A DNA stretch of 63,194 nucleotides, the filler included, from Octopus bimaculoides (Eukaryota), in the NCBI RefSeq assembly GCF_001194135.2. It is 7 parts of 6 records of this genome, joined end to end, with 100 filler letters (N's around TTAATTAATTAA, not from the genome) between each part and the next. Parts side by side here need not be neighbours in the genome. Positions count along the whole stretch, not along the records: positions 22,022 to 46,928 come from NC_068993.1; 6 more parts are not named here. One strand, given 5' to 3'. The notes beneath the pieces are model-generated. The model had not been told where the DNA came from. It made no database searches and saw only the letters and a list, made by a program, of their open reading frames with translations. A program made the translations under genes and the position numbers. Positions 24,211-43,024 of the stretch are shown piece by piece; within the stretch, counting starts at the first letter, position 1, and each line of letters opens with the position of its first letter.

Positions 24211-24849
24211 TATATACTAGCTCAAAAGTCGCCCTATTAGGTGGCTTTTCAGCAAGAATATAGCTTTTAATCTACTAACCTCGAATGGGAAGGTCTGCTA
24301 ACAGATCTCTGGCTTGTTTTCAAGAATTTTTTACAATTGTTTCCTCCAGAATCATCTCACACTGATGATGATATTTGTAGCAAAACATCGCCAAAAATTA
24401 TTGCTGGATTTCACAATTAATTTTGATTATCCCCAAAATTTATTTCCAAGTGATAAAAATTGTTATTGTACAAAAAAATTTTGTTGCAAAAAGTCATGTA
24501 AAAAATCGTCAAAAGCAATTAATTACAGTAATGAAAACTGAATCTAAAATATCAGGATGGCGAGTCCAGATTTGGCCCGGAATGTTTTTAATTTACTCAT
24601 GGAGTTGGCTTGGTTCCAAAATTGTATGATATGTTGGGCTATGGCCTCTATGAGTGAAGTTGAAAAAGTGTGACACACTGACAATTCTCTCTCTCTTTCT
24701 CTCCCTCTCTCTCTCTGTCACCCTCTCTCTCTCTTTCTCACGCATATACACACACACACACTCACTCCCACTCATAAACATGTTAATATGAAGTATATCA
24801 CATGCAATGTGATAGTTCTGTAATTAAAATGTTTAACCCTTATTTTCAG

Positions 24850-24999
24850 AATGTCCTAAGACAGTGACCATTTGCAACCAAAATGTAGTTTGTCCAAATA
24901 ATACAGTGTACAACAAGTGTCAAATACCTTTTCTGAAAAATGCCACACTTACATGCAATGACACTCTACAATGGGATCCTTCTTTTCAGTGTCCAAAAG
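24850..24999 (+). CDS. Membrane-protein gene exon A: Cys-rich ectodomain module 1
   Basis: ccctattttcag / gtaaat; 150 nt, phase 1-1, open: (E)CPKTVTICNQNVVCPNNTVYNKCQIPFLKNATLTCNDTLQWDPSFQCPK; sequons NNT, NAT, NDT. Confidence 0.85.
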
Positions 25000-25519
25000 G
25001 TAAATTAGAACATGTTGTTATATTTTTAAGTGTTTATTAAGAAATTACTGTAAAATTAGTGGTTGACAAGCTGAGAAATGTTTATTAGTTCATGTCCCCC
25101 GTCAGTGACACTGCACTTGCATGTGTAACTCTCAAATAGTTAAGCCCACCTTGCTGTAAGTAGGTACCACAGTATAGGATCAACTCATCACTGTAAGGCC
25201 TCAGACCATAAAACAACACAAGTGCTTCTTTAGCTTAATGAGCTGGGTTCAGTTCCTCATGAATTTATCAAGGAAATTGGAATAGAGTGCCCAGTAGAAC
25301 TGTTACAAAAGGTCTGCCTCCTTGGTATGGCTGGAATAATCAGGAAAGTATTAGACAACTGAAAACAATGGATAGCATGATAGTGTAGGCTGCAGGTAGC
25401 AAGCCTGCTACACATGCAAGGCTCCAGGAATTCCAACAAAAAGAAATAATAACAACAATAATAGAAATGGTTTCAAATTCTGGTACAAGAGCAGCAATTT
25501 CAGGGAGGGAATAACTGGT

Positions 25520-26020
25520 ACATATTTTATCAAAAGGATGACAGGCAAAGTTGACCCCAGCAGAATTTGAACTCAGAAAGGAAAAACACAAAATGCTACT
25601 GAGCATTTCACCTGACATCCTAACATTTCTGATTTCAAATTTTGGCACAAAGCCAGCAACTTTAGGCAGGGAGCGGATAAGTTGATTATATCAACCCCTG
25701 TATTCAACTGGTACTTATTTTATCAACTCCAAAAGGATGAAAAGCTAAGTCAGTCATGGTGGAATCTGAACCCAGAATGTGAAAATGGATGAAATACCAC
25801 TAAGCATTTTGCCTGGCATAATAATAATAATAATAATGATGATAATAATAATAATAATAATAATGATGATAATAATCCTTTCTGTTATAGGTACAAAGCC
25901 TGAAATTTTGGGTGGGAGGGGACTAGTCAATTACATCAACCCCAGTATTTCACTGGTACTTAATTTATCGACCCCAAAAATGATGAAAAGCAAAGTCGAC
26001 CTCAGTGGAATTTGAACTCA
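25520..26020 (-). mobile_element. Cluster of three SINE family B fragments
   Basis: caaaaggatga..ggcaaagttgacc / actggtactta.tttatc.acccc motifs at about 25530, 25700 and 25950. Confidence 0.8.
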
Positions 26021-27574
26021 CAAAGCATTTCAATCAGTATGCTAACAATCTTGCCAGGTTGCAAATGATTTTCATGGCTTTTCATCTTTACTGATTGGAA
26101 GTGTTATCATGTGCATCGTTTTGTCTTGGTATAAAAGATGGACTACAGCAAATATTCTGCTCAATACCACAGATTTGCTTGTCAGTTGTTTGACCAGTTG
26201 AGCATGTCCCTTGGTGGCTGATGATAGACAAACTTATAGGAAAAATACACACTGAAAATAAAACAAAATGCTTAGCAACTCAAAACAGTTTGCTACAGCA
26301 AAAGAAAAATAGCACATCAGATGCTATATCTCCAGAAATGTATAAGACACATAAAGAAAAAAAAAAGAAAGAAACATAACAGAGGTAGCCATGCATACAG
26401 CAAACAAAAAGCTAAGCTAAAGTAAAATTTCTACACAGCTACTCATACCGGGAATAAATAGTACAGTACAGGAAAACAGCAACATAGAAAAGGAAACACT
26501 GAAACACAAAACAAGCAAAATAACACACACCATGACAGGCCAGCTATAATTGATGATGGGGATAAACTCACTGAAGAAATAGCAAAAATAGAAGAAAACA
26601 TCACAAAATCAATAAACAGTGTCCCCCTCCTATCAGTGTAAATGTCTCCCCAAATTACAAAAAAACACAGCAAAAACAAACAACTCTGTGAAAGGATAAA
26701 TAGATACAACAGAGCCCTACATGAAATAATGACCATGTCAAAAGATATCTTAGATATCTTTTCCTTACTTAGGAACATTACACAAATAAACCTCTGAAGT
26801 CATGCAAACTTCACAATCCCTGATAACATTGGGGAACATGATTTTTGTTCTCTCGAATTGGAGGCATGGTTTTCCTAGTAGCTTTGAGGTGATGATTTCA
26901 AAAATGAAATCAATTTTTCATGAACTCATTTTCCAACATTTCTGATATTTTCACCATTTCTAAGGATAGTTGGCTTCAAAGGCACATCCATATATGGAGC
27001 TTGACATAACTTTGAAAAACATAGTTTATCATTTGAAGTAAATACAACTACAAAGACGAAAACAAAAAGCCATGATTTTAATATTGCCAGTAAATAAAAA
27101 GCATCAAACCTGAGCAACTTTCACTATTTTCAATCTAACCAGTCTTAAATGTCATAATGATGACTGAAATGTCTTTTATATGATTAGATATTAATAAACA
27201 ATATATTTCTGTGGTCTTTAACATCATATATGTCTCATATTTGTGGAATTTGTCTGCAGATATGCCCACACTGTACTTGATTTAGTGTGACTATCATTGC
27301 AAACTAGGCAAGACGTGTTTTGTTGAACCATTAATTATTTCTTATGAAAATCTGTATTTTGAAGGTGCGCTTAATGTTTTAATTGTAAGGTCACATGGGT
27401 CAGGGTCACTTTTTGTCAAACATGGTCAAAGAACTGTAGAAAGAATTTCATGGTGTATACGTTTTTTTATGGAACTTTGCCATCACAAATCTGCATTTGC
27501 TGATTTTATAACTTTTGAAAATTCTGAAAATGCTTTACTCAGTAGCATGAATATGTTTTTTTGTATTTCAGAAA

Positions 27575-28020
27575 TATGACCAGTTGTGAAAGAATAAAAT
27601 GCAAAAACAGCCCAAGTCTTTTGCTTATATTTGTGGATGTTACACTTAACTAAGCAGCAAAACAAAATCATAGATTTTTTTTGTGAAGAAAGCTTACTTT
27701 GGCATGAAATTAGGTGGTCAAGACAAAGCCTGGATATTCCATATAGTGTATAAAACATGTGTTGAAACACTGAGACAGTGACTGTTTCAAATAATTAGGC
27801 AGAAGGCTTCCAGTTTTGTCTTGTGAGAAAATTAAGGTTGGTGTATTTAACAGGTTACAGATGATATGGGTAATGCAGGATAAGCAGTTTTTGAGAGATC
27901 ATGTCTGGCAGTGAAAAGAAGCATGGAATGCTTTTGCTAGAGCTGTGTCTGATTTCCTGGGGAAACAGGAAGTCATCAAATTATTAAGAACTTATGCAGA
28001 CTCTGTTAACCAATGTTTGA
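27575..28020 (+). mobile_element. Decayed, internally deleted DNA transposase, probably CMC/Chapaev3-like
   Basis: Fragments CKNSP..YICGCYT, GMKLGGQDKAWIFHIVYKTCVETLRQ, EAWNAFARAVSDFLG..NY*ELMQTLL..LGCNM resemble recalled FCYICG / GDQDKxWAPH / NFLGN..LGCNMS transposase motifs. Confidence 0.6.
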
Positions 28021-28416
28021 TAATTGGGCTGCAACATGTATATGATGAGATGCTAAAAAGTTCCTGGCCTTAAAGGGTATCATGAAAGGCCTGGCTACAT
28101 GCCTTCATATAGAAACTAATATTATAACAAAGAAAAGACAGAGAAAAAGAATCCAACATTTTGGTAGATTATTGTACTTATTCAGAGATTAAGGTGTAGG
28201 GAAAAAACTTGATAGAAGAAAACTGATAGAAGCTTTTAAATCAGCATGCTAATTTTAGTGTAGATCAGGGGAAAAAATAAATTGAACAGAAATTATGTTC
28301 AAAATTGTTCCCTTGTGTAATCATTCATAACACGATGATGATGATGATGATGATGATGAAGGTGATGATAATTTTAATCCTGTAAACTGATTTTGTTGTT
28401 TTGCTTAAATTTCCAG

Positions 28417-28602
28417 TTAATCAAAGTAAATTTTCTCCAAAAGAACAAGAATGCCCTCACAATGTTTCTGTCTGTGAAAAAAATATTCAACCAAACAAAA
28501 CAGCTGTTGGCACTAAGTTTGAGGAATCACTATTTGGCCATCGTATCCATTTTAAATGTCAAAATAACTTTGAATGGCAATATGATTATCAATGTCCAAA
28601 TG
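28417..28602 (+). CDS. Exon B: Cys-rich ectodomain module 2
   Basis: ttgttttgcttaaatttccag / gtaagt; 186 nt, phase 1-1: (V)NQSKFSPKEQECPHNVSVCEKNIQPNKTAVGTKFEESLFGHRIHFKCQNNFEWQYDYQCPN; aligns with exon A. Confidence 0.9.
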
Positions 28603-29177
28603 GTAAGTAAGAATAACATTTTTCTTACATATATAAGGTGATGATAATGGTGGTGGTGATGTTGAGAAAGTAGTTATATCTGTGACATAAGTAGGAATTG
28701 GAGATCTATATGATGTCCTCACTGTCTGCTCAATTCTTTTCTGTTTTCAGTTTCTCAATATATTCACTTAGATCTAGGCATTGCATCACATAAACATGTA
28801 CATATATGCATGTCTATGTGCTTGTTTGTGTTTGTATGAGCTATGCATACAACTGATAAGGTAATCTGCATAGCAGTAATTATTGTTAATAGTGGTTTTC
28901 ACTAACAGTCTCAACTACAACTAAAAACACTTAACTCTGTATGGATTACCTTACAAGTGTGTTATACCAGTGTGTATAAGCAGGAAAAAGTAGTCGTTTT
29001 TTTTTTTCTGAAATATCTTGTAAAACAACACTTGAGACTGTGATATTGGTGTCAGTTTATGTATTTTTGTTTATATTGTATATATCATGAGTATTTTTGC
29101 CTTATAAGTCTTACTATAACATTTTGATGTATGAGTCATGTTAACCCAGTTTAGACCAGTTGTTGTTTTTATTGCAG

Positions 29178-29294
29178 GTAAAGTATCAAAAGCTAAACGA
29201 AATATAATAGTAATCACCTGCTTAGGAGTATTTGTTCCATTATTATTGGTGTTGCTAGCAATAATATGTTGCTGCAAATCACATACAAAGAAAG
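29178..29294 (+). CDS. Exon C: transmembrane exon
   Basis: gttgtttttattgcag / gtttgt; 117 nt, phase 1-1: (G)KVSKAKRNIIVITCLGVFVPLLLVLLAIICCCKSHTKK. A hydrophobic span of about 22 aa is followed by a Cys cluster and basic stop-transfer residues. Confidence 0.85.
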
Positions 29295-29958
29295 GTTTGT
29301 ATAATATTAGAGCTTAAACTTTCTAATAACATTGTGTTGAGTGCGTCCCAAGTCTAAGAAACATTCTCAATTTCACTTCACATCACATTAACAATTCTTG
29401 TTTCTCTTTACCTTAAAAATACAATAATGAATGCTTTGTGTGTATTGTATGTAACTTACTATCACCGTCTCTGTGCATCGCCAACCAACACCTAAACATT
29501 CCAAATATCCGATCTCCTTCTTAATTCCCAAACCAGCCTCACTTACCATCTTTGTATCTATTAAACTGCCCACTCACTACCTAATCCTAACTACTTAACC
29601 ATATATCTAATACTAAGCCATTCTCCACTGTCTGGAACCTACAAAGGTGGGACCTCTGATTAGGCATAGGTTTCACCAGCTTTTTGTTACTGATCTCTTC
29701 ATACATAATTGTTTCAAGACAGCTAAGAGGGTGATGAAAACTATTCTCTAAGAGATTACATCAAATCTACCAAATGATATGTTTGTAATTGTACGATAGT
29801 ATCACAAGTGAAGAGCGTAGTTTATGATCTACAGAAGAGGCAGCAGCCATAGCCTTTACAACCCGTCTTCTCTAATGCACTTATCTAATTCTGTTTTATA
29901 TTGTTATATCTAATGTACTGTTTGATATTGTTTCTCTTTTCATAAATTTGTTTTTAAG

Positions 29959-30159
29959 GAAGCCCTATCTTACAATATTTTAAGGCTGTAGTAGGGAAAT
30001 GTATCTCATGCAACTGTCCACGTAAAAGAGAGGTCCCAGATGTTACAAATGGGGAGCAAAATGAATTATTTGTGTTGCTAGAGCGCAGCGTTACTCGTGG
30101 TAATGATACTTCAACTGTTGAGGAGCAAAGACAATTATCCTGTACAGATCACATTTCAA
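29959..30159 (+). CDS. Exon D: cytoplasmic cassette 1
   Basis: tttctcttttcataaatttgtttttaag / gtaagt; 201 nt, phase 1-1, open: (G)SPILQYFKAVVGKCISCNCPRKREVPDVTNGEQNELF...RSVTRGNDTSTVEEQRQLSCTDHIS. Confidence 0.8.
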
Positions 30160-30328
30160 GTAAGTATTAAGAAATTGTGAAACATTATCGTACTTCTGGT
30201 TACATAATTGTCAAAGTGGTTAGGTTGCAGAACAAACATGTTCACTGGTGATGTACTGTATATTTCCATGTATAAGACGATCTTTAGATAAGATGAGATT
30301 AAGGTTTGTAAAAAATTTAAGGAATTTG

Positions 30329-30660
30329 TCATCATCATCATCATCATCGTGTAATGTCCGCTTTCCATGCTAGCATGGACAATTTGACTGAGGTGAACCA
30401 GATGGCTGCACCAGGCTCCAATCTGATCTGGAAGAGTTTCTACGGCTGGATGCCCTTCCTAATGCCAACCACTCCGAGAGTGTAGTGGGTGCTTTTACAT
30501 GCCACCGGCACAAGAGCCAGTCAGGCGGTACTGGCAACAGCCACACTGAAATGGTGTTTTTTATGTGCCACCTGAACAGGAGCCAGTCCAGTGGCACTGG
30601 CAATGACCTCACTCAAATATTTTTTCACGTGCCACCGGCACAAGTGCCAGTATGGCGACA
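30329..30660 (-). mobile_element. RTE 3' tail (intronic)
   Basis: (cat)n tail, gatgcccttcct motif and gtgccacc units. Confidence 0.85.
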
Positions 30661-30739
30661 GACGACTGCTAAATTACAAAACCATCTGTGTACAAGCTAG
30701 CTTTTGCATCAAGTGAAATTTATAATTATTTTATACCTA

Positions 30740-31140
30740 TATCAACATGCAACCACCAGCAAAAGAAGAAAATATGAGACTAGTTTCAAATTGAAAGTTA
30801 TAGAAGTAGCCAAGAGTTTAAATAATCGTGCTGCTGCTAGAGCATTCAATGTTACCAAGGAGATGGTACGAGAATGGAGAAAGAATGAGGAAAAATTAAG
30901 ACAAATGCCCAAACAAAAATGTGCAATGAGAAGAGGAAGCACTCGTTGACCAAAGTTGGAAAATGATGTAGCAGAATGGGTACTCCAGCAAAGACAAGAT
31001 GGCTACATTGTAGCACAAAATAAAACAAGATCTTATGCCCTAAAATGGGCTAAATCATATAAAGAAAAAAGTAAGATCTTAAAGCAACAGTAGCCTGGTG
31101 CAATCATTTTATGAGCAGACAAAAACTGGTAATAAGGGAC
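30740..31140 (+). mobile_element. Pogo/Tigger-like transposase N-terminal fragment; probable terminal piece at about 32230-32330
   Basis: KRRKYETSFKLKVIEVAKSLNNRAAARAFNVTKEMVREWRK...R*PKLENDVAEWV (HTH_psq / CENP-B-type HTH pattern). Confidence 0.8.
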
Positions 31141-31254
31141 TGTGTTGAAACAGATATTATTGTATTTCAGGATGGTCATTTTTTTTTTTTTGCCAAATAA
31201 ACACACGCACTATATATTTATTCTTCACTTGTTTATTACTGTTCTTATTTTAAC

Positions 31255-31800
31255 TCATGTTCATTGTCTGGAAATCTTTCATCAAACAGCTGTGACCTCT
31301 TTAAGTACAGAGGCCTATCTTTAGCTATATATTGCTCCTGCTGCTGCCTTACAAGAACTATAGCATTGATGGTGCTTCTCCCTGGCATAAAACCAAACTG
31401 CATCTCATCTAGACTAATTCTCCTCCACATTAGTTGGGCTATGACTCTCTCTGTAACTTTCATCACCAGACCCAACAATATGAGACCTCTGTAATTATTT
31501 CTATCTAAGGCATCACCTTTACTTTTCTAGCAGTTGACTATGGTGCTGCTACACAAGTCATTGGGTATGACTCCTTCGTGAATTACCTGATTTACAATAC
31601 AGGTGACTAAACCATAACCTACACCACCAGATATTTTAAGCATCTCAGCAGTGACTCCTGAAGGGACAGGAGCTTTCCCTGTCTTCATGTCCTTAATTGC
31701 TTTACCAGGGTACTACTGATTCAGGTAGCTGGTCCTTCAATTGGGTCCACATTCATTTTCTACATTCATAATGGCATTTCCAAGCCTCTTTCTTTTCAGA
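31255..31800 (-). mobile_element. RTE RT fragment (intronic)
   Basis: VMKVTERVIAQLM..ISLDEMQFGFMPGRSTINAI matches 44860-44960. Confidence 0.85.
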
Positions 31801-31873
31801 ATCACCTAATGCATGTGCAACAGCATCCATTTCTCTCCTATAATATTTATCTTTTCCTACAATTATTTTCAAG

Positions 31874-32050
31874 ATATTAACAATGAAAATACTTGTGAAG
31901 TAGACCAGCTAAGAGAGCTCGGTGGGCCAGCCAATGAATCTAAGAGAAATAATGACAAAGATAGTGGATACAGTGAAGAAACTCATCAAGATGATGTACA
32001 ACAGGAGAACTGTGGCAATGATACATTGTCGCATACAGCTAACAATATGA
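31874..32050 (+). CDS. Exon E: cytoplasmic cassette 2
   Basis: ttttcctacaattattttcaag / gtaagt; 177 nt, phase 1-1: INNENTCEVDQLRELGGPANESKRNNDKDSGYSEETHQDDVQQENCGNDTLSHTANNM. Confidence 0.9.
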
Positions 32051-32654
32051 GTAAGTATTAAGCAATTGTGAAATATTATCATACTTCTGGTTACACAATT
32101 GTCAAGTGGTTAGGTTGCGGAACAAACATGTGTTCACAAGAGATGTAGATTTAATCTTTTGTATCTGATATATTTCTAGCAAAGCTACATATTACATAGT
32201 AATATGTGAGTCGAGCTGCACAGCAGACAAATATATTGATGAGGCACCTAACCTTGCTTTGATCCTCTAGCCTCGCTTTGATACAGTAGCCTCATTCTGA
32301 GACACTAGCCTCGTTCTGAACTACACTGTAGAAACAGCCTCAGTTCCTGCCAGGCTTTGGTCAAAGACTCATGTCTTCTCTACAGCTCCACATACAATCT
32401 CCCACATGCAACTCACATGTCTATTCACCAACGACACAAAATATATGGTTCGTAAACAAGGATATTTTATCACATACACATTCTCAAAATGACTGTTCTC
32501 ACATATGCATACACACTGTGATACAAATATTATATGTTACTTCTTTCAGTGCAAAAACAAAAATCAAAACTTTCTTTGTATGTAAACACACGTTTTTGTA
32601 TTATACTACATACTTCCACCACAAAAAGTGAACACAGAATAGACAATATATTTC

Positions 32655-32965
32655 ATCATCATCATTGTCGTCGTTTAACGTCCGCTTTCCATGCTAGCAT
32701 GGGTTAGACGATTTGACTGAAGACTGGTGAAACCAGATGGCTACACCAGGCTCCAATCTGATTTGGCAGAGTTTCTACAGCTGGTTGCCCTTCCTAACGT
32801 CATGCCCTTCCTGTCTTATGGTGATTCATACTATTTTTCCATCTAATAACATGCACTTGAATGTCCAGCAAATTAGCCTGGTGCAGCCATCTGGTTCGCC
32901 AGTCCTCAGTCAAATTGCCCAACCCATGCTAGCATGGAAGGCGGACGTTAAACGATGATGATGTA
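32655..32965. mobile_element. Two RTE 3' tails in opposite orientation (about 90-bp inverted repeat)
   Basis: About 32660-32755 (minus) and 32876-32963 (plus) are reverse complements. Confidence 0.9.
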
Positions 32966-33081
32966 TGTATGCAATATGTGTAGGTGTGTGTATGTATATA
33001 CACTTTACCTCTCATTCTAGCCTAATGCAGTTATCTAGTGTTGACTTTATTATATTGTTTTTATTTTCATGTAATTTGAAG

Positions 33082-33243
33082 AAGATGACAGCATGTGTAA
33101 TCATGATGAAAATCCACCAACAGACACCCCTCCCCTGAAGATTAGCAAGACTAAAAGAAGTCTTATGAAATCTTTATCATTAGGTGTTCTTTTGACAGCT
33201 GATTCTTCAAATACATCATTATTGAGTCTGCCTGGCAATATAA
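33082..33243 (+). CDS. Exon F: cytoplasmic cassette 3
   Basis: tttttattttcatgtaatttgaag (NAGNAG, alternative start 33085) / gtaagt; 162 nt, phase 1-1: DDSMCNHDENPPTDTPPLKISKTKRSLMKSLSLGVLLTADSSNTSLLSLPGNI. Confidence 0.85.
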
Positions 33244-33824
33244 GTAAGTATGAAGAATTTGTGAAATATTATCAAAGTTTGTCATAGTTCTCATACAGTT
33301 GTCAAATGGTTAGTTTTCAGAAATGGAATCCAAGCCATTTTCTCGCTATTTTGCCTATCATGTCCAAAACTTTAGATCTTCCACAATTCTTGTAGACATA
33401 ATGAGAGACAGATCTAGAGGAGTTGTGAAGCTGCTAGGGAAGTATCATGGTGGACTTGTGCTGTGTGCAATAGGCTAAATGCAGAGAAGCCTCAGACATG
33501 AAACAAAGTACAAGGTTTTCTTGATTGATAGTAGTAATGGTATGAGTAGAATAAGCATACTTTTGTAGAGAAGTGTGTAGATAAAGTAATCAATATCGTC
33601 AGAGTGAATGATAAGATAATTAAACTTTGATTTATTTTACATAATATGATAGCAACAGTTATCTCCACTTACTCTCCACAATCTAGATATTAGCATATGA
33701 ACTGAAGGTCCTGTTCAATGAAGCCTCATTCTTACTACTTTAGCCACAAATAGCAATGACTTCATCATTTTGGCTAATAACTTCAATAAACATGTTTGGC
33801 AACACCCTAGCAGTTTCCATAACA

Positions 33825-34310
33825 TCATCATCATCATCATCCTCATCATCCGCTTTCCATGCTAGCATGGGCTGGACGATTTGACTGGGGACTGGTGAAA
33901 CCAGATGGCAACACCAGGCTCCAATCTGATTTGGCAGAGTTTCTACAGCTGGATGCCCTTCCTAATGCCAACCACTCCGAGAGTGTAGTGGGTGCTTTTA
34001 CGTGTCACCCGCACGAAGGCCAGTCAGGCGGTACTGGCAACGGCCACACTCAAAATGGTGTATTTTATGTGCCACCCGCACAAGAGCCAGTCCAGGGGCA
34101 CTGGCAACGATCTCGCTCAAAAATCCTTACACATGTCACGGGGCACAAGTGCCAGAAAGGCGATGCTGGGCACAGGTGCCATCCCGATTTCACTTTCACT
34201 TGCCCTAATAAGTCTTCGCAAGCTGAGTTTTGTGTCCAATGAAGGAGACGACGTTGGCATGGGTGCCAGTCGTCAAATTTAGTTCAATTTCACTTGCCTC
34301 AACAACATAC
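33825..34310 (-). mobile_element. RTE 3'UTR and tail
   Basis: Same tail and unit array as other copies. Confidence 0.9.
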
Positions 34311-34715
34311 ATGGATATTAAAACTTGGGTCTAAGGGTCAAGGAGGACACAAAGCTCCTACACTTCTATAATGTTGATGAATGACAATTTGCAACACTGA
34401 CTTCAGGAAACCACCTACAAATCAAGTAAACACACAAGCCAGATAAATTTCATTCTTAGATCATGAAATTTTTCTCTGAGAAGAATGTACAACCCAACAC
34501 AGGTTAGTAATTAGTGGCTTCAGAGTAAGATCTAGATGGATTCAGAAATACAGAACTTCACTTAGGGAATGACAAAGGACTGTGACATGCAGTAATGCCA
34601 CAACTGTGATAGATTAGTTATGTTATGCCTAACATTAAGCGTGAATGATGCTTTATACCAAGTTATGTCAATAAGTGAGCAGAAAGGTAAAACCTGTTTA
34701 AAAATTTGCTAAATT

Positions 34716-35000
34716 CATCATCGTCGTTTAACGTCCGCTTTCCATGCTAGCATAGGTTGGACGATTTGACTGAGGACTGGTGAACCGGATGGCCACACCA
34801 GGCTCCAATCTGATTTGGCAGAGTTTCTACAGATGGATGCCCTTCCTAACGCCAACCACTCAGAGAGTGTAGTGGGTGCTTTTACGTGCCACCAGCATGA
34901 TAGCCAGTCAGGTGGTACTGGCAACAGCCACACTCAAAATGGTGTATTTTACGTGCCACCTGCACAGGAGCCAGACCAGCGGCACTGGCACGATATTGAT
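34716..35000 (-). mobile_element. RTE 3' tail
   Basis: Same tail motifs. Confidence 0.9.
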
Positions 35001-35111
35001 TGTTTAAAAAAAAACCCTGCTTCATTGAATGAGAGAATGCATTTCTGAAAATTCATATGAGTTATAAATTTAGCAAACAATATATTCATACTTCCCACTT
35101 TTATTTTACAG

Positions 35112-35147
35112 ATGAGCCAAGGTGTCATTTATCAATGCCAGTACAAG
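35112..35147 (+). CDS. Exon G: 36-nt microexon
   Basis: cttttattttacag / gtaaat; phase 1-1: EPRCHLSMPVQ. Confidence 0.75.
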
Positions 35148-35199
35148 GTAAATAGATCATTATTATTCACATTCTACAGTCTATAATTTCTCTAATACA

Positions 35200-35945
35200 A
35201 AGTGAGCATATTTTTGTTTGTTTGTACATTGACTGCTGAAAGCACTAAATAAAATTGATAATATTTCAGGATTTTCGTCCCATTTAGATTATTTGAAACA
35301 TTTTGCAAATAACTGCACTTATTTTTTAAAAATAGATTGGGTAGTGGGTGGGGTGGGGTGAGTTGGTGGTGTATCGACTCCTATTTCTAGCAATCCATGT
35401 ATTGTCTATTTCACCGTAATGTCTATACATCCTTATAAAAAGCATTGTCTGCTTCTTTGCTTGTACATTGTACATTGATTGCTGAAAACACTAAATATAA
35501 AAAGCAAAGTTTGTTTGTTTGTACGTTGACCACTGGAAATGCAAAATGATATTGATAATATTTCAGGCTTTTCATATCATTACAATTCATTTGATATTCC
35601 GCAGATAACTGCGCACTTATTTTCCAAAACCAGACTGGTAGGAGGGGGACAGTTGGTGATGTATTGGCACCTATTTCTAACAATCTATGTACTGACAATT
35701 TCACTGTAATGTTTATATCGCTGTCCTTATGAAAAGCAAAGTTTGTTTATTTGCACATTGACTGCTGAAAACACTAAATAAAATTAATATTTCAGGTTTA
35801 TCATGTCATTTCAATTAATTTGACCATTCTGCAGATAACTGTGCACTTATTTTATGAAAACGGAATGGATGAGGGTGGAAGCCAAGTTGATGGTGCATAG
35901 GCTTCTATTTCTAGCAATCCACGTACTGTCTATTGCACCATAATA
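35200..35945. repeat. Three tandem intronic units of about 250-270 bp
   Basis: tttgtttg..cattgactgctgaaa.cactaaata..atttcagg..gataactg..cacttattt..ttggtg.tg..ctatttcta.caatc recurs three times. Confidence 0.85.
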
Positions 35946-36557
35946 CTTTTTAGAGAGGGAAAAAATACTCCACCTATCACTCAATCTGCCTCTAACTTTC
36001 TCGAAGGTTATACATTACAGTTATTCTTTTGAAGTTACCACCAGACCTCTGCATTTTCTCTGTCTATATGTCCCTTTCTATGCCTCTGAGAGCATTCTGG
36101 GTGATAGCAGATAAGTAAGGTGTGATAGTAGGCAGGGAAAGATAATGGGAAATGGAAGTGGTTTGGGGTAGGGAAGAAAAGTATCTGGGAAAGGTGGGGG
36201 ATGTAGTATGTGGCTATTCTGCTCTCAGGTGATAGAAAAGTGATGGATGTTTGGGTATGAAATTTGAGGGGCAAAGGTTGACAGTGTGGAACCCCTTATA
36301 TACAAGCATTGCCAAAGTGGTTTTAGGATATCAGTTCTACTGTGGTAGACGAGTCTTTTTAAGAATAGCAAGGTGCCAGTTATTTCAATCCTTTTTCATC
36401 TCTTTTGTAAGGCTCAGCATTTTGAGATCAACCTTCAGCACTTCATTCTGTGTCTTTCTGGGTCTTCCTCTTCCACAAGTTCCAGGAACACAGAAGCATA
36501 ACCTGTATTTTATGCTTTATATAATTTAAACTGTATTTCTATATTTCCCCTTTTCAG

Positions 36558-36587
36558 AACATGGTAGCACAGCAGTGTCAGCTTATG
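36558..36587 (+). CDS. Exon H: 30-nt microexon
   Basis: atttccccttttcag / gtatgt; phase 1-1: HGSTAVSAY. Confidence 0.75.
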
Positions 36588-36639
36588 GTATGTATATCTT
36601 TTTCAACTAAGCTATATACAGTCTGCCAAGTGAAACTAT

Positions 36640-38290
36640 AGTCATAGCCGATGCTGGTGTCACATAACTGGTACCTGTGTCAGTGGCATGTAAAAAGCAC
36701 CCTTTGAATGTTGGGCCTCACAGAGTTAATAAGTGACCAAGACCTTTAGTGATATGCCATGCTTGAGAAGTCTCATCAAGCCAACTGAAATAATAAGTGT
36801 GACTGATGCCTGTGTCATTCAACTGGCACCCATGCTAGTGGAACATAAAAAGCACCCATTACACTTTTGGAATGGTTTGCATTAGGAAGGGCAATCAGCT
36901 GTAGAAACCATGCCAAATGAGATTGGGACCTGATGCGGCTCTCCATTTTATCAGTTTTAGTCAAACAGTCTAACCCATGCCAGCATGGAAAGCAGGCGCT
37001 AAATGATGACGATGATGAAGGTGATGAATCAGCCTGCATTTATCACGCACCATTCCAAGAGTGTAATGGGTGCTTTTACGTGTCACCTGCATAGGTGCCA
37101 TTTGCATGACACTGGTATCTACCATGACTGCAGTTTTACTTGGCTTCATGGGTCTTCTTCTCAAGCACAACATAATGCCAAATGGACTCAGTCCTTGCTT
37201 CTGTGATAGGTCTTCTCTCAAGCATAATATAATACCAAAGATCCCGAACATTGCCTCTGTGAGGCCCAGCATTCGAAAGGAGCTCAATCACTTTTCCTCT
37301 GTGAGGCTCAGCACTTGAATGGTGCTTTTTAAGTTCCACCTGCATGGGTACTGGTTATGTCACACCAGCATCAGCCATGACTGTGAATTCACTTGGTTTG
37401 ATCAGCCTTCTCAAGCATAGCATATTGCCAAAGGTCTCGGCCACTAGTCATTGATTCTGTGAGGTCCAAAGTTCAGAGATCATGCCTCACCACTTCATCC
37501 CATGTCTTACTGGGTCTACCTGTACCACAGGTTCCCTCCACAGTTAGGGATCGGCACTTCTTTACACAGTTATCCTCATCCATATGCATCACATGACCAT
37601 AGCAGTGCATTCGTCTCTCTTGCACACCACTTCTGGTGCCTCTCATGCCTAACTTTTCTCTCAAGATGCTTACATTCTGTCAAACATGCACACTGGCGTT
37701 GCACATCCAGCGAAGCATGCTGGCTTCATTTCTTTCAAGCCTATGCATGTCCTCGGCTGTCATAGCCCATGTTTCACTGCCATGCAGCATAACTGTTCAC
37801 ACACAGGCATCATACAATCTACCTTTCACTCTGAGAGAGAGGCCCTTTGTTGCCAACAGAGACAGGAGCTCTGTAAACTTTGCCCAACCTAATCTTATTC
37901 TAACAGCTATGCTCTCGGAGCATCCACCTCTGCTATAATGTGATCACCTAGGTAACTGAAGTTATTTACTACCTCTAGCTTATCCCCATGGCAGTTGATG
38001 GGGTCTATTTTCTGAACATTTTTGGTGTTTATTGTACCTGTGCATTTACCACACACAAAAGCTATTTTCTCTGTTAACCTTCCTCTGATATTGCTGCACC
38101 TTTTATGTGTCAAGAGCTTACACTGGGTTCATCTTACAGGGTTACTACCTACACCTTTTCTACACATAGAGCAGGGCTATCTACCTGAAGGGACTTGTAA
38201 TTTGTCTGCCTTCCTACTTACTACGACTTTGGTTTTTCGTAGGTTAACTCTAAGGCCCTTCAACCTTGCTTCCATACCTGGAACATCTCC
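36640..38290 (-). mobile_element. RTE LINE 3' portion (minus, about 37020-38290) abutting a plus-strand RTE tail (about 36640-37020)
   Basis: Minus: THKRCSNIRGRLTEKIAFVCGKC, REKLGMRGTRSGVQERRMHCYGHVMHMDEDNCVKKC. Plus-strand tail ends ggcgctaaatgatgacgatg. Confidence 0.9.
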
Positions 38291-38429
38291 AGTTCCAAAC
38301 ACATGAACTCACACGCACACACACACACACACACACAGATATATATAAAAATTTTCATAGAGCCTTTTATCTTCCTTTTGAGGAAGAAATAGAAGCAAAA
38401 AGGAAAAAAAAGAGAAAAATCAAAAATGA

Positions 38430-38850
38430 TTTCAGTGATGACCACACCACATTTCCAGGAGTGTCACTCATGGAAGACCTTCCAGATTGCTCATCCCCTT
38501 CCAGGGATATTCTTCCACTTTTGAAGCACCCATGCCACTGAAAACATTGCGTATGACCCCCCGGTCTCATCGTCATAGGCTTGTCAAAGTATGTTCAATG
38601 TATAGCAGACTTCCCAATTTTAATGCAAAATTTCACATTGGCTTTTTGTTCCTGTCCATGACAATATCACAGACTACAGCTGACATGTCATCACAAAAAC
38701 CCAAATTTCACAACTTGAGAAATAAAGACAGCAATGTTACTTGACACATAGCCTCAAGAAGGTCACTACTAGCTCTCATAGTGCATGCAAACATGTACTG
38801 CCATCTGTTGGCACACTATAGAACAAGTCCAGATTGGAAATAACGATGTC
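38430..38850 (-). mobile_element. Mariner 5' fragment, same family as 10427-11336
   Basis: Shares cagacttccc..tttaatgcaaaatttca..ttgg, gaaggtca.t.ctagct and tgccatctgttgg with the 10.9-11.3 kb region. Confidence 0.8.
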
Positions 38851-38934
38851 ATACACATATATACACACACATTCACATACATACACTCACTTACATATAA
38901 TGTTTTAAACTGTATTTCTATCCTCTCTTTTCAG

Positions 38935-38964
38935 CTATTGATAGTTTCATATCATTAACCTTTG
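38935..38964 (+). CDS. Exon I: 30-nt microexon (paralog of H)
   Basis: tcctctcttttcag / gtatgt; phase 1-1: IDSFISLTF; flanks duplicated from exon H. Confidence 0.75.
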
Positions 38965-39088
38965 GTATGTATATCTTTTTCAACATAACTATATACAGTC
39001 TGTGTGTTAATATTAGCATTTCCTTTAATACATGTAATCAGCCTGCATTTATCACACACCACACTTTAAATATAATTGAAAAGCTAAA

Positions 39089-39173
39089 TTCTTTGAAAAG
39101 CTGAATTTCTAACATGGGATTATTTCCAAGTCAGCTGATTCCTTTCATTAATGCTTTGTCAAGATGTCTCTCT

Positions 39174-39219
<46 letters not shown>

Positions 39220-39223
39220 CAGA

Positions 39224-39257
<34 letters not shown>

Positions 39258-39791
39258 CACACACTCATTCACTCACACACACACACTAACTCGCTCACAA
39301 AATATGCATGTTTAATTTGCTTCATTGTTTGTATAAATCTCATGTTGTTATTCTCTCTCTCTCTCTCTCTTCAGATTCCAGTTTAAATATTGAGTATCCA
39401 GAAGGTAATTTCCAATTAACCACTTCTCTTTTTACACATTTCTCCTTTCACCCTGATAACAGTTTGTGATTTCCAACTTTTGCCGCCTTCCCTCCATCGC
39501 AACACTCGTTCTTCTTAACCGGGGACAGTTATAAAAGGGACACTACTCTTGCAGAAATTTGCTTAGTCAAACCTGGCGATGTTTCATCATATTTGATTCA
39601 CAAGATTCGTCTTTGAGTTTGTATGTCACATATTCACAGATATTCGCTTCTGTGTATGTCTGACTGAGAGTTTATGCCCTTGTATTTAAGGATGCATATG
39701 TATAATGATAGTGACGTCTTTGAAAAGCTGAATTTCTAACATGGGATTATTTTCAAGTCAGCTGACTCCTTTCATTAATGCTTTGTCAAGA

Positions 39792-39810
<19 letters not shown>
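39089..39810. repeat. About 90-bp direct repeat plus (CT)n at about 39089 and 39719
   Basis: tttgaaaagctgaatttctaacatgggattattt.caagtcagctga.tcctttcattaatgctttgtcaagat occurs twice. Confidence 0.9.
39375..39404 (+). CDS. Exon J: 30-nt microexon
   Basis: (CT)n-tcag / gtaatt; phase 1-1: SSLNIEYPE. Confidence 0.7.
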
Positions 39811-39824
<14 letters not shown>

Positions 39825-39869
39825 ATCTCTCTCTATTTCTATCTCTATTTCACTCACACACATGCCAGC

Positions 39870-40280
39870 TACAATGTTGGCAGACAAGACGCTGGCCATT
39901 CCCTGGTTATATCAATTATGACCAATACCAATGCATGATGCAGTCCTATTGTCAGACACAGGGTCTCCCAGCAGCCACCCTCTTGAGCCAGGGTAACACT
40001 ACCTGCTCCAGGCACTTGATGTAGGCCTCCATGCTGAGTCTAAGGCTATGTGGGAAGATGAATGGAGGAATAATGTTGCCCTCACTATTGATCACTCCAA
40101 ACAGCATTGATTTTTATCACTCTCAGTACGTGTTTATATCAGAGCTTCCAGGACTCCGTATTGAAGCTTCTAGTGCTAATGCCAAACAGTACAGCATGTC
40201 GTTTTCAAATCTTTGGAAGAGTAAATTGCATCATGGTACTGTTTTTCTCACAGACGGTGCGTAACTGACCCTGCTATACT
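39870..40280 (-). mobile_element. Tc1/mariner (DD37D-like) transposase fragment
   Basis: FGVINSEGNIIPPFIFPHSLRLSMEAYIKCLEQVVLPWLKRVAAGRPCV*Q*D. Confidence 0.75.
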
Positions 40281-40418
40281 GTGTAGTCAATAGAACCAAA
40301 AACAAACAATGCACATGCATGAAATTAGAAATATAAAATGGCCACAATTTACCCATCGCACCCTGTATATATGTATAGATATATATATATATATGTATTT
40401 AATTTTTTTTTTTTCTAG

Positions 40419-40463
40419 ATACCAATCACATGAGATATGACAGTTCTGTTTTGAGTGTTTAAG
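40419..40463 (+). CDS. Exon K: last coding exon (45 nt, contains stop)
   Basis: (T)n-ctag / gtatgt; phase-1 start: TNHMRYDSSVLSV* with TAA one nt before the donor. Confidence 0.7.
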
Positions 40464-41574
40464 GTATGTATATATTTGTATGTGTTTGTGTGTAGTCATC
40501 ATCCTCATCATCTTTTAATGTCCATCTTCCATGCAGTATGGTTAGTTTGACAGGACCTGAAGAGTCTGAGGATTACTTCATGCTCAAATGCCTGCCTTCA
40601 CATGGTTTCTGTGACTGCCCCCCCCCCCAACCTTTGCCATCCACTTTACAGAGTGTACTAGATACTTTTTTCATGGCACCAAAATTATATTTAGTGAATT
40701 AGTGAATTTGTATCCTTGCTATCGTTATATTCTGAATATTAACATTAAAAAACAAAAGAAACAGAAACTGAGACAAGCCGTTCTACTTTACAAGTCACAT
40801 GACTAAAAAAGACAAAAAACAGTCAACCACTTTTTATCCTGACTGCTTTTCTGCCAGAAGCTACATGACATATATAAACATCGGCATTTTCCCATTTTGT
40901 GAAAGCTGATAAAATCCACAACAATTGCTCTCGAGTAACTATGTCAGACTGCTGTTTCTTGCAAAACGTTCATATAATACATACGGAAAAAAAAATGATA
41001 AAACAAAACATAGGCTCAGATATTAGTGAGATATCAACTCAGAAGAGACAACCATAGACAGCAGTCAATATTAGCCTGTGTTCTTTTTAGCTTAATGACC
41101 CTGCTTTCTGATGCATATTATTTCTGAAGTTCTGTACTCTGCACACATTATGAATTCTCTACAATCAAGAAATCAAGGGCTGACTACTCTTCAAACATTA
41201 TTAGAAAATGTTTGAGAAACAAGAGGAGCCCACAGCTCCCTCAACCATTCAGTTAAATTATTCAAATAGTAATCTTACATTTTCACAATTTAATACTAAA
41301 TCTATTGAATAAGGATCCAGTTTATATATTCATTGAATGCAAACTGGGGAAATGGTACAAGGAAAATCCGTGAAGACAGACTTTTGGTTAAGACCATATT
41401 GATAGTGGAGTGTGGGTGGGGTGGATGTTTGAATATTTGAGGAATGTAGAGTGTTTTACTGTTAAAACTGATCCAAATTATGCTTAGAATCAGTTTTTCG
41501 TGCATCAGGTGTGTGAGAAGTGGAAGGTGACCAGAAACATAGGTCACCCTCATCGAACTTAAATAACCACTTCA

Positions 41575-42330: not shown

Positions 42331-43024
42331 GATGCTTCTCCCCTATCTTTTATTGCCTTGTTTTTTAACATATTTTTTTGAATTATACACTTGATCTACT
42401 TACCTAATTATTTTGTATAATTATTTGTTCTTTTATTCTTTTATTTCAGAAGAAATATACATTTTCATTTATTAAACTACGTAGATAAATTAATTTACAA
42501 GACAACTCAGAATAATGCGACACGAGAAAATTGTTCTGGACTGAACAATAACCTGATTGTTTATATATTAAAAAGCACACAAAAAAACGCTGCCATCTTA
42601 ACTGATTTTTGCACTTCTATTCTAGACCCATTAATGTAAATATCTTCATCTGAATTAAAACCATCATCTGAAAGTTCTTACTTTTGCTGTCTCTTGGTTT
42701 GTATTTTGTATTTGATGTATTTAAAATATTAGATATATTACTTATATATTCGATGTGTCTAATTTATTTATCCACATAATGGTTTCTCTAATCCAGAAGA
42801 TGCTCTCATCTAAATTTGCTAGTTCGCGGTACGCCCGCCCTCCCNNNNNNNNNNNNNNNNNNNNNNNNNNNNNNNNNNNNNNNNNNNNNNNNNNNNNNNN
42901 NNNNNNNNNNNNNNNNNNNNNNNNNNNNNNNNNNNNNNNNNNNNNNNNNNNNNNNNNNNNNNNNNNNNNNNNNNNNNNNNNNNNNNNNNNNNNNNNNNNN
43001 NNNNNNNNNNNNNNNNNNNNNNNN

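What the first reader, a model, noticed from the sequence alone, without database searches (positions are those of the whole stretch)
24850..40463. Hidden 11-exon gene for an unrecognised single-pass receptor-like protein with all junctions in phase 1
Eleven exons (150, 186, 117, 201, 177, 162, 36, 30, 30, 30, 45 nt) have canonical AG/GT ends and splice into one stop-free frame of about 387 aa. The order is Cys-rich glycosylated ectodomain, TM plus CCC plus basic residues, long low-complexity tail, stop. Every internal exon is symmetric, so any subset can be skipped in frame: a modular, potentially combinatorial receptor. I cannot assign it to a known family. The architecture recalls lineage-specific immune or allorecognition receptors (inference).
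Basis: partly seen in the sequence, partly recalled or inferred. Interest (0 to 1): 0.85.

Follow-up and report, generated by a model that had tools for sequence, protein, structure and literature searches.

The report
Fast-evolving octopus membrane glycoprotein gene

Summary
Eleven AG/GT-bounded segments of exactly the stated lengths lie at 24850-40463. They splice into one open frame of 387 codons, and every junction is in phase 1.

Ten of the eleven are orthologous, in order and with conserved splice sites, to the exons of Octopus sinensis LOC115218344 (XP_036364319) and O. vulgaris CAI9732129-31. The 11th (40419-40463) has no annotated counterpart. The annotated O. sinensis last exon maps instead to 42450-42475.

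The gene is cut at its 5' end. The signal-peptide exon and the "head" exon seen in relatives are not in the piece.

The protein belongs to an octopod-only family (Octopus spp. and Argonauta). Members have a signal peptide, a Cys-rich head, one to four 47-residue six-Cys modules, a TM helix and a disordered tail. In one paralogue I checked, each module is one 150-nt phase 1-1 exon. There is no Pfam or PDB sequence match. The predicted fold resembles fibronectin type I modules only weakly.

Against O. sinensis, exons differ at 18.2% of sites and introns at 7.7% (p 3e-23). Four-fold sites also differ more (22%). dN/dS is 0.64, so classical positive selection is not shown.

An immune or allorecognition role and combinatorial splicing remain untested.

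The parts
24850..24999 (+). Exon 1 of the piece (150 nt, phase 1-1). It encodes the canonical six-Cys module CPKTVTICNQNVVCPNNTVYNKCQIPFLKNATLTCNDTLQWDPSFQCPK. It is not the first exon of the gene.
   Evidence: AG/GT ends and a polypyrimidine tract. 76-85% amino-acid identity to O. vulgaris and O. sinensis exon 1. AF2 pLDDT 89.
28417..28602 (+). Exon 2 (186 nt). It encodes a linker and a degenerate four-Cys copy of the module (C3 and C4 are lost).
   Evidence: It aligns with the other repeats. The equivalent domain in P0001 has pLDDT 92-95.
29178..29294 (+). Exon 3 (117 nt). It encodes the juxtamembrane stalk, the TM helix (29204-29266), CCC (29267-29275) and the basic stop-transfer KSHTKK.
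   Evidence: The AF2 helix 201-219 in P0001 corresponds to this TM segment.
29959..30159 (+). Exon 4 (201 nt). Start of the cytoplasmic tail, with the conserved stretches QYFK..VGKC.SC and RQLSCT.
31874..32050 (+). Exon 5 (177 nt). Acidic, Asn-rich tail with the conserved stretches INNENTCE, DSGY.E.TH.DD.QQ.NCGND and TANN.
33082..33243 (+). Exon 6 (162 nt). Tail, with the conserved stretches DDS.CNHDE and SLLSLP.N.
35112..35147 (+). Exon 7 (36 nt micro-exon, EPRCHLSMPVQ).
   Evidence: Orthologous to L001 50511-50546 (EPKCRLSIPVQ); flanks about 95% identical.
36558..36587 (+). Exon 8 (30 nt, HGSTAVSAY). Member 1 of a tandemly duplicated exon-plus-flank unit (about 36521-36625).
   Evidence: cross-matches.
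38935..38964 (+). Exon 9 (30 nt, IDSFISLTF). Member 2 of the duplicated unit (about 38895-39002).
   Evidence: Orthologous to L001 58056-58085 (LASLESSFF). Compared with exon 8, the 40 nt downstream are 35/40 identical but the exon bodies only 12/30.
39375..39404 (+). Exon 10 (30 nt, SSLNIEYPE). The O. sinensis counterpart is 31 nt, so the two species read different frames downstream.
40419..40463 (+). Unverified. It may be an alternative or poison cassette, or a chance match.
   Evidence: AG/GT ends are present in the window. The aligned O. sinensis stretch (within L001 61562-61717) also has AG/GT ends but is not in the annotated model and is not frame-compatible there.
42450..42475 (+). Alternative last coding exon (EEIYIFIY-stop).
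   Evidence: The acceptor and upstream intron are conserved. The frame is open from exon 10 to a TAA. ATTAAA/AATAAA signals lie at 42567 and 42654.

Best explanation
**What is shown.** The window carries the 3' four-fifths of a real, intact protein-coding gene of an Octopus species. It is the orthologue of O. sinensis LOC115218344.

The product is a type I membrane glycoprotein of an octopod-restricted, uncharacterised family. Family members share:
- a signal peptide;
- a Cys-rich 'head' (W.YK.KLG..EYCC.C.KDF...EC..KNKND..PFCNC.KG..P);
- one to four copies of a 47-residue six-Cys beta-rich module (CPxxxT[IV]CNRx[IV]xCPExxxYxECxVPFxxxxxLxCNDSLxWExxFxC);
- one TM helix and a disordered tail. In this gene the TM helix is followed by a CCC motif.

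In the one paralogue whose exon structure I examined, each extracellular module is one 150-nt exon in phase 1-1. Paralogues differ in their number of repeats, P0013 carries near-identical tandem repeats, and the tail micro-exons 8 and 9 of this gene are duplicates.

The coding sequence changes unusually fast: exon substitutions are 2.3 times intron substitutions.

**What is inferred.**
- The family grows and shrinks by exon and gene duplication.
- The protein sits at the cell surface.
- The two disulfide-bonded modules and the head bind an extracellular partner.
- The CCC motif is palmitoylated.
- The acidic, Ser/Asn-rich tail carries short conserved linear motifs for trafficking or signalling.
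- The pace of change suggests a partner that itself changes, such as a pathogen or a self or gamete surface, rather than a housekeeping ligand.
For: **Gene model.**
- Eleven AG/GT exons form one frame.
- The only close homologues in 5.8 billion proteins are O. vulgaris and O. sinensis 'uncharacterized' proteins, at 62-66% identity over the full length.
- The window is colinear with the O. sinensis locus, and exons 1-10 align one to one with conserved splice sites.
- The O. vulgaris annotation pipeline used Iso-Seq, RNA-seq and PASA transcripts (PMC10700109). Whether reads support this particular locus was not checked.

**Family.**
- HMMER against 1.84 billion representatives finds seven further clusters, with length-supported hits. 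[quoted passage not shown] One has the accession number next to this gene's orthologue in O. vulgaris.
- 19 repeats were extracted and 17 aligned; the Cys and Trp columns are invariant or nearly so.
- The paralogue LOC115229376 has one module per 150-nt phase-1 exon.

**Structure.**
- AF2 gives pLDDT 90-95 for both modules, a TM helix, and a tail below 40.
- The window's own module has pLDDT 89, with a beta-hairpin plus a three-stranded sheet.

**Constraint.**
- No stop or frameshift in 10 exons.
- dN/dS is 0.37 in the ectodomain.
- All Cys and Trp of the window's two modules are kept against O. sinensis.

**Acceleration.**
- Exon differences 201/1107 against intron differences 420/5421, Fisher p 3e-23.
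- dN 0.197 against Ki 0.082.
- Four-fold sites 19/86, binomial p 2.7e-5.
Against: - No transcript data for the window's species were available, so splicing there is inferred from orthology.
- The 5' end (start codon, signal peptide, head) is outside the piece, so the type I topology rests on the relatives.
- Function is entirely inferred. There are no expression data and no known domain, and I saw no recognisable signalling motif in the tail.
- dN/dS is below 1 (0.64 overall), so classical positive selection is not demonstrated.
- The three codon positions differ almost equally (17.9, 18.8 and 20.4%). That also fits weak constraint combined with a locally raised mutation or conversion rate.
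- The acceleration rests on one species pair and about 1.1 kb of coding sequence.
Confidence: 0.8

Rival explanations
1. The symmetric exons are skipped or chosen in many combinations, so one gene yields a repertoire of receptor isoforms used for immune recognition or allorecognition.
For: - All ten internal exons are multiples of 3 in phase 1, both in the window and in 10 consecutive O. sinensis exons.
- Exons 8 and 9 are same-length tandem duplicates whose intron flanks are far better kept than the exon bodies, a pattern seen at regulated alternative exons.
- O. vulgaris and O. sinensis models use different acceptors for exon 2, and O. vulgaris has three N-terminal variants.
- The protein evolves fast.
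Against: - None of the four annotated isoforms skips a cassette exon, and exons 8 and 9 are both included in series.
- The variable-looking exons are mostly in the cytoplasmic tail, not in the ligand-facing part.
- There are only two extracellular modules and no exon arrays.
- Symmetric phase 1-1 exons are the normal state of shuffled extracellular modules (established knowledge; Patthy's exon-shuffling work), and the paralogue shows the same layout.
Confidence: 0.1
2. The locus is a weakly constrained, young lineage-specific gene drifting almost neutrally. The exon-over-intron excess reflects exon-limited gene conversion from paralogues or a local mutational bias, not adaptation.
For: - The three codon positions diverge almost equally.
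- dN/dS is 0.85 in the tail.
- The C-terminus differs in length and frame among three species.
- Synonymous and four-fold sites are raised too, which selection on amino acids alone does not explain.
- Paralogues exist that could act as conversion donors.
Against: - The frame and splice sites are intact in three species.
- Ectodomain dN/dS is 0.37 with every Cys and Trp kept against O. sinensis.
- Conserved islands persist in the tail (EHGSTAVSAY, INNENTCE, SLLSLP).
- Paralogues are only about 40-50% identical in the modules and share no tail similarity, so they are poor conversion donors for tail exons.
Confidence: 0.25
3. The series is not a functional gene in this species. It could be a decaying copy, or an artefact of choosing AG/GT segments in AT-rich DNA.
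For: - No protein from the window's species was found in the database.
- Many chance 30- and 36-nt candidates exist.
- The start of the gene is missing from the piece.
Against: - About 370 codons are open across ten exons that are orthologous to an annotated gene, with every splice site canonical.
- At the base composition of this DNA, a fixed frame of that length stays open with a probability of roughly 1e-10 or less (my own estimate from the composition).
Confidence: 0.04

Closest known systems
Octopus sinensis LOC115218344 (XP_036364319.1) and Octopus vulgaris CAI9732129-CAI9732131 ('uncharacterized' or 'hypothetical predicted' protein)
   Same: - Orthologous locus with colinear introns that are about 92% identical.
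- Same exon order and same phase.
- Same two modules, TM helix, C(C/Y)C-KSH motif and tail islands.
   Different: - Only 62-66% amino-acid identity.
- The window lacks a recognisable copy of the 24-nt exon GNGEKTTF.
- Exon 10 is 30 nt rather than 31 nt, so the C-terminus differs.
- The exon 1-10 span is 14.6 kb against 49 kb.
Octopod paralogues: O. vulgaris CAI9732128, O. sinensis LOC115229376 / O. bimaculoides A0A0L8H5C1, O. bimaculoides A0A0L8GVR5, Argonauta hians GAB1601604 and GAB1601623
   Same: - The same six-Cys 47-residue module.
- Most have a TM segment after the modules.
- One module per 150-nt phase-1 exon in the paralogue examined.
- The orthologues of the window's gene share the head module with them.
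   Different: - One to four modules rather than two.
- Tails are unrelated in sequence.
- The second module of the window's gene has lost C3 and C4.
Fibronectin type I (F1) modules; Sushi/CCP modules
   Same: - Extracellular disulfide-bonded modules of about 45-60 residues, with a two-stranded plus a three-stranded antiparallel sheet.
- A conserved Trp before the last Cys (Sushi-like spacing).
- Each module is encoded by one phase 1-1 exon (established knowledge).
- The best Foldseek hits of the two-module model are F1 pairs (E 3e-3 to 0.1, probability 0.6-0.8).
   Different: - No Pfam fn1 or Sushi match, even at E below 10.
- Six Cys in a different spacing.
- The single-module model has no structural match below E 1.
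Genes whose exons diverge faster than their introns: abalone lysin and the 18-kDa sperm protein (Metz et al. 1998), crotaline snake venom PLA2 (Nakashima et al. 1993, 1995), Conus conopeptides (Olivera 1999; Conticello 2001).
   Same: - Coding substitution rates exceed intron rates.
- Synonymous sites are raised as well.
- Intron flanks are well conserved.
   Different: - Those are secreted effector or gamete proteins, usually with dN/dS above 1.
- This one is a membrane protein with dN/dS of 0.64.
- It has been measured on one species pair only.

Membership tests
Octopod LOC115218344-type family (uncharacterised; not in Pfam) | Orthology or colinearity with LOC115218344: the same exons in the same order, with conserved splice sites | tested here: met
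   ten exons align one to one; introns are 92% identical and colinear.
Octopod LOC115218344-type family (uncharacterised; not in Pfam) | 47-residue module with spacing C-x6-C-x5-C-x8-C-x11-C-x11-C and a Trp six residues before the last Cys | tested here: met
   Exon 1 fits fully. Exon 2 keeps C1, C2, C5, C6 and the Trp.
Octopod LOC115218344-type family (uncharacterised; not in Pfam) | N-terminal signal peptide and Cys-rich head module | not testable with these tools
   Found neither in the piece nor within 10 kb upstream in O. sinensis. These exons lie beyond the piece's edge.
Octopod LOC115218344-type family (uncharacterised; not in Pfam) | Single TM helix after the modules, followed by a low-complexity tail | tested here: met
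Fibronectin type I module (Pfam fn1, PF00039) | Match to the family profile | tested here: not met
   No fn1 hit at E up to 10 for the window's modules, P0001 or the paralogues. No PDB sequence hit for the 17-repeat profile.
Fibronectin type I module (Pfam fn1, PF00039) | Fold: two-stranded sheet followed by a three-stranded antiparallel sheet, with structural similarity to solved F1 modules | tested here: inconclusive
   The strand order fits. F1 pairs are the top Foldseek hits for the two-module model, but at E 3e-3 to 0.1 and TM below 0.35. The single module matches F1 only at E 9.7.
Sushi/CCP (PF00084) | Profile match, and structural similarity to CCP modules | tested here: not met
   No Pfam hit. 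CD55 and CD46 appear only at E 0.7-7, with TM at or below 0.38.
TNFR cysteine-rich domain (the name UniProt gives the O. bimaculoides paralogue A0A0L8H5C1) | Match to TNFR_c6 (PF00020), or to TNFR structures | tested here: not met
   No TNFR_c6 hit for P0013 or any family member at E up to 1. No TNFR structure among the Foldseek hits listed.
Dscam-like combinatorial recognition receptors | Arrays of mutually exclusive alternative exons encoding ligand-binding domains | tested here: not met
   The only duplicated exons (8 and 9) are cytoplasmic micro-exons, and both are included in the annotated isoforms. No Ig or FN3 domains.

The most novel reading that the evidence does not exclude
This octopod-only family may be a set of surface recognition molecules whose exons are actively diversified. 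In this gene, exon bodies (including synonymous sites, and even 30-nt micro-exons) diverge two to three times faster than the introns around them, while splice flanks stay nearly frozen. That would point to selection-driven or mechanism-driven, exon-targeted hyperdivergence, as in conopeptides, venom PLA2 and abalone lysin, but here in a membrane receptor used for non-self, conspecific or gamete recognition.
Probability: 0.15. Interest if true: 0.75.

Novelty: new member of a known kind. Interest (0 to 1): 0.36.

Why it matters
**What the finding adds.**
- It places a gene in a stretch where no protein of the window's own species turned up in the protein database.
- It links that gene to predicted loci in sister species.
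- It defines, from sequence, an octopod-restricted family built from a 47-residue six-Cys module that has no Pfam entry. In the paralogue examined, each module is one exon.

**Why the evolutionary rate is of interest.** The wider point is the exon-faster-than-intron pattern. If it holds across more octopods, this family would be a candidate for a rapidly co-evolving surface recognition system in cephalopods, whose innate immune and gamete-recognition receptors are poorly known.

**If the pattern does not hold.** The gene is then an ordinary lineage-specific membrane glycoprotein.

Tried and rejected
- **Sequence homology to known families.** Pfam on the spliced protein, the single modules, P0001 and eight family members gave only sub-threshold noise (Mid2 on the TM segment, and others). 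phmmer and a 17-repeat profile against PDB sequences gave nothing meaningful.
- **Profile searches of the 5.8-billion-protein set.** The repeat alignment (A4) found nothing. The head-plus-repeat alignment (A7) recovered only two known members. The word index seems too coarse for these short queries.
- **Structure comparison.** Foldseek gave only weak fibronectin type I-pair hits for the two-module model, and none below E 1 for the single module. I therefore do not file the module under fn1, Sushi or TNFR.
- **Missing exons.** I looked for the 24-nt O. sinensis micro-exon in window intron 1 with blastn, local alignment and a scan for phase-1 candidates; it was not found. I looked for the signal and head exons in the piece and in 10 kb upstream in O. 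sinensis; they were not found.
- **Using low-identity islands to discover exons.** This was rejected because indels and microsatellites in introns create as many islands as exons do.
- **RNA-editing-like A/G bias as the cause of exon divergence.** Rejected: A-G changes are 32% of exon differences and 31% of intron differences.
- **Literature.** No paper in the held library mentions the three LOC numbers.

Full report
**1. The observation**

The piece (22022-46928) is AT-rich eukaryotic DNA, 30-46% G+C, and full of transposon remnants.

| Exon | Coordinates | Length (nt) |
|---|---|---|
| 1 | 24850-24999 | 150 |
| 2 | 28417-28602 | 186 |
| 3 | 29178-29294 | 117 |
| 4 | 29959-30159 | 201 |
| 5 | 31874-32050 | 177 |
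| 6 | 33082-33243 | 162 |
| 7 | 35112-35147 | 36 |
| 8 | 36558-36587 | 30 |
| 9 | 38935-38964 | 30 |
| 10 | 39375-39404 | 30 |
| 11 | 40419-40463 | 45 |

- The six long exons have pyrimidine-rich acceptors. Five donors read GTAAGT or GTAAAT; exon 3's is GTTTGT.
- Joined, they give 1164 nt, or 387 codons, ending in TAA. Every junction is in phase 1.
- The protein has the stated order:
  - 119 extracellular residues with 10 Cys and six N-x-S/T sequons;
  - the helix IIVITCLGVFVPLLLVLLAII;
  - CCC-KSHTKK;
  - a 228-residue tail rich in Ser, Asn, Asp and Glu (net charge -12).
- The short exons could not have been picked reliably from the sequence alone. Twelve 30-nt and eleven 36-nt chance candidates fit the phase between 33244 and 40420.

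**2. Independent support: an annotated orthologue**

- A search of 5.8 billion proteins with exons 1-6 found a single cluster. It holds O. vulgaris CAI9732129-31 (445, 454 and 343 aa) and O. sinensis XP_036364319 (LOC115218344, 365 aa). All are named "uncharacterized" and none has a Pfam domain.
- tblastn of these proteins on the window hits exons 1-8 in order, including EPRCHLSMPVQ and HGSTAVSAY.
- I fetched the O. sinensis locus as L001 and rebuilt its exon chain. The lengths are 150, 24, 192, 105, 204, 186, 174, 36, 30, 30, 31 and 19 nt. All have AG/GT ends, and the translation contains XP_036364319 exactly.
- The window is colinear with L001 along the whole gene. Exons 1-10 align one to one with the splice sites conserved.
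- The O. vulgaris annotation pipeline integrated Iso-Seq, RNA-seq and PASA transcripts (PMC10700109). I did not check whether reads support this particular locus.
- No protein of the window's own species appeared in the search. In that sense the gene is "hidden" there, but it is not unknown in the genus.

**3. Corrections to the model**

- **The gene is incomplete at its 5' end.**
  - Exon 1 starts at an acceptor.
  - The O. vulgaris isoforms carry 75-84 more N-terminal residues: a hydrophobic leader and a Cys-rich "head".
  - These residues are found neither in the piece nor in the 10 kb upstream of exon 1 in O. sinensis.
- **An extra micro-exon in the sister species.** O. sinensis and O. vulgaris have a 24-nt exon (GNGEKTTF) between exons 1 and 2. 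I found no counterpart in the window. Its intron 1 is 3.4 kb against 19.8 kb, and the region does not align.
- **Exon 11 is unsupported.**
  - Its O. sinensis counterpart keeps an AG and a GT. It is not in the annotated model and would not be in frame there.
  - The annotated O. sinensis last exon maps to window 42450-42475. Read from exon 10, it gives EEIYIFIY-stop, and poly(A) signals follow it.
  - Exon 10 is 30 nt in the window and 31 nt in O. sinensis, and O. vulgaris stops inside it. The extreme C-terminus is therefore not conserved.

**4. What the protein is**

- An exhaustive HMMER search of 1.84 billion representative proteins with the O. vulgaris orthologue found seven further clusters matching over more than 50 residues.
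  - The five named ones are from O. vulgaris (CAI9732128, the accession next to the orthologue), O. sinensis, O. bimaculoides and Argonauta hians.
  - The other two are unnamed short-contig proteins.
- The orthologues and most paralogues share a leader, the head module, and then one to four copies of a 47-residue module with the spacing C-x6-C-x5-C-x8-C-x11-C-x11-C and a Trp six residues before the last Cys. Most also have a TM segment and an unrelated low-complexity tail.
- The window's exon 1 is a canonical module. Exon 2 is a copy that has lost C3 and C4 together.
- In the paralogue LOC115229376, the head and each module are single 150-nt exons in phase 1-1.
- The O. bimaculoides paralogue has three near-identical tandem modules, which points to recent exon duplication. 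The all-phase-1 layout is therefore the family's normal modular design.
- Within the window, exons 8 and 9 are tandem duplicates of a unit of about 105 nt.

**5. Comparison with known domains**

- Pfam gives nothing for any member. PDB sequences give nothing, even with a profile of 17 repeats.
- AlphaFold2 with a 16-row alignment models both modules at pLDDT 90-95, the TM helix, and a tail below 40.
- The window's own exon-1 module reaches pLDDT 89. It forms a beta-hairpin followed by a three-stranded sheet.
- Foldseek against the PDB ranks fibronectin type I module pairs first for the two-module model, but weakly: E 3e-3 to 0.1, probability 0.6-0.8, TM below 0.35.
- For the single module nothing scores below E 1. 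Pacifastin-type inhibitors, CD55/CD46 and F1 all fall at E 1-10.
- The UniProt name "TNFR-Cys domain-containing" for one paralogue is not backed by a TNFR_c6 hit.
- I therefore describe the module as a small disulfide-rich beta module that works like F1 or Sushi modules in mosaic surface proteins. I do not file it in those families.

**6. Evolutionary rate**

| Measure (window vs O. sinensis) | Value |
|---|---|
| Substitutions in 13 intron blocks | 420/5421 = 7.7% (Ki 0.082); every block 89.5-94.4% identical |
| Substitutions in exons 1-10 | 201/1107 = 18.2% (Fisher p 3e-23) |
| dN / dS / ratio (Nei-Gojobori) | 0.197 / 0.31 / 0.64 |
| dN/dS by region | ectodomain 0.37, TM 0.43, tail 0.85 |
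| Four-fold degenerate sites differing | 19/86 = 22% (binomial p 2.7e-5 against the intron rate) |
| Differences by codon position | 17.9%, 18.8%, 20.4% |
| Transitions/transversions | exons 1.14, introns 1.64 |
| A-G share of differences | exons 32%, introns 31% |

- The same contrast shows between the duplicated exons 8 and 9. The 40 nt downstream of each are 35/40 identical, while the exon bodies are 12/30 identical.
- Nonsynonymous change runs about 2.4 times the intron rate, and synonymous sites are raised too.
- The ectodomain keeps every Cys and Trp against O. sinensis, and the tail keeps short islands such as INNENTCE, DSGY.E, SLLSLP and EHGSTAVSAY.
- The evidence rests on one species pair and about 1.1 kb of coding sequence. 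dN/dS is below 1.
- Positive selection is therefore a reasonable reading, not a demonstrated one. Weak constraint combined with exon-limited conversion or a mutational bias remains possible.
- For scale, a paralogue's ectodomain is 86% identical between O. sinensis and O. bimaculoides.

**7. Mechanism**

*Shown:*
- An intact multi-exon gene that is the orthologue of LOC115218344.
- A type I-like architecture with two confidently folded Cys-rich modules, one TM helix and a disordered tail.
- One module per symmetric exon in the paralogue examined.
- Fast exon divergence.

*Inferred:*
- Cell-surface location.
- Partner binding through the head and modules.
- Palmitoylation of the CCC motif.
- Short linear motifs in the tail for trafficking or signalling.
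- A changing partner, such as a pathogen or a self or gamete surface.

Nothing here tests an immune or allorecognition role. By my own reading of the sequence, the tail has no [SIVL]xYxx[ILV]-type tyrosine motif.

The combinatorial-splicing idea has no support in the four annotated isoforms. They differ at the N-terminus and at an alternative acceptor of exon 2 only.

**8. Verdict**

- The gene is a new member of an already predicted but uncharacterised octopod-specific family.
- The points worth following up are the undescribed module family and the excess of exon over intron divergence.

Noticed in passing
window 24850-39404 versus L001 9918-59235: The same ten exons span 14.6 kb in the window but 49 kb in O. 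sinensis. Intron 1 is 3.4 kb against 19.8 kb. Much of the extra DNA in O. sinensis does not align and looks like repeat insertions.
   Followed up: partly
window 23563-24240 (+): Two adjacent ORFs of a mariner/Tc1-type transposase remnant just upstream of exon 1. Pfam Transposase_1 scores E 3e-20 on the first. The same stretch aligns to O. sinensis at about 86%.
   Followed up: partly
window 43158-45960 (+), with an assembly gap of 180 N at 42845-43024: A broken LINE-type retrotransposon downstream of the gene. It has a weak AP-endonuclease match (E 4.5e-4, below the Pfam cut-off) and a PHD/C1-like zinc finger (E 2e-6), spread over several frames.
   Followed up: partly
window 30329-30651, 32653-32813, 33811-34169, 34673-34990, 41563-41942: At least five copies of one interspersed repeat sit in the introns. 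It has internal subrepeats of about 64 nt that read ...GAFTCH.H.SQSGGTGNSHTQ... when translated. Each copy matches about ten places in the O. sinensis locus.
   Followed up: no
window 30704-30949 (+), intron 4: A short ORF with a Brinker/HTH transposase-type DNA-binding domain (Pfam BrkDBD, E 6e-12). It is probably a DNA-transposon fragment.
   Followed up: no
window 36521-36625 and 38895-39002; L001 53799-53905 and 58021-58123: Exons 8 and 9 with their flanks are an old tandem duplication present in both species. The paralogous intron flanks are about 88-90% identical, but the 30-nt exon bodies are only 40% identical. This suggests strong constraint on splice-regulatory flanks, or conversion limited to the flanks.
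   Followed up: partly
P0001 residue 98 versus window exon 1 and L001 9918-10067: O. vulgaris has Phe where the window and the O. sinensis genome have the fourth Cys of module 1 (YNEFQV against YNKCQI and YNECQV). That leaves an odd number of Cys in that module.
   Followed up: no
window 39150-39270 and 39780-39870; also 24640-24760: CT/CA dinucleotide microsatellites that read as SLSLSL or THTHTH in the ORF lists. They account for several low-identity islands in the intron alignment.
   Followed up: no
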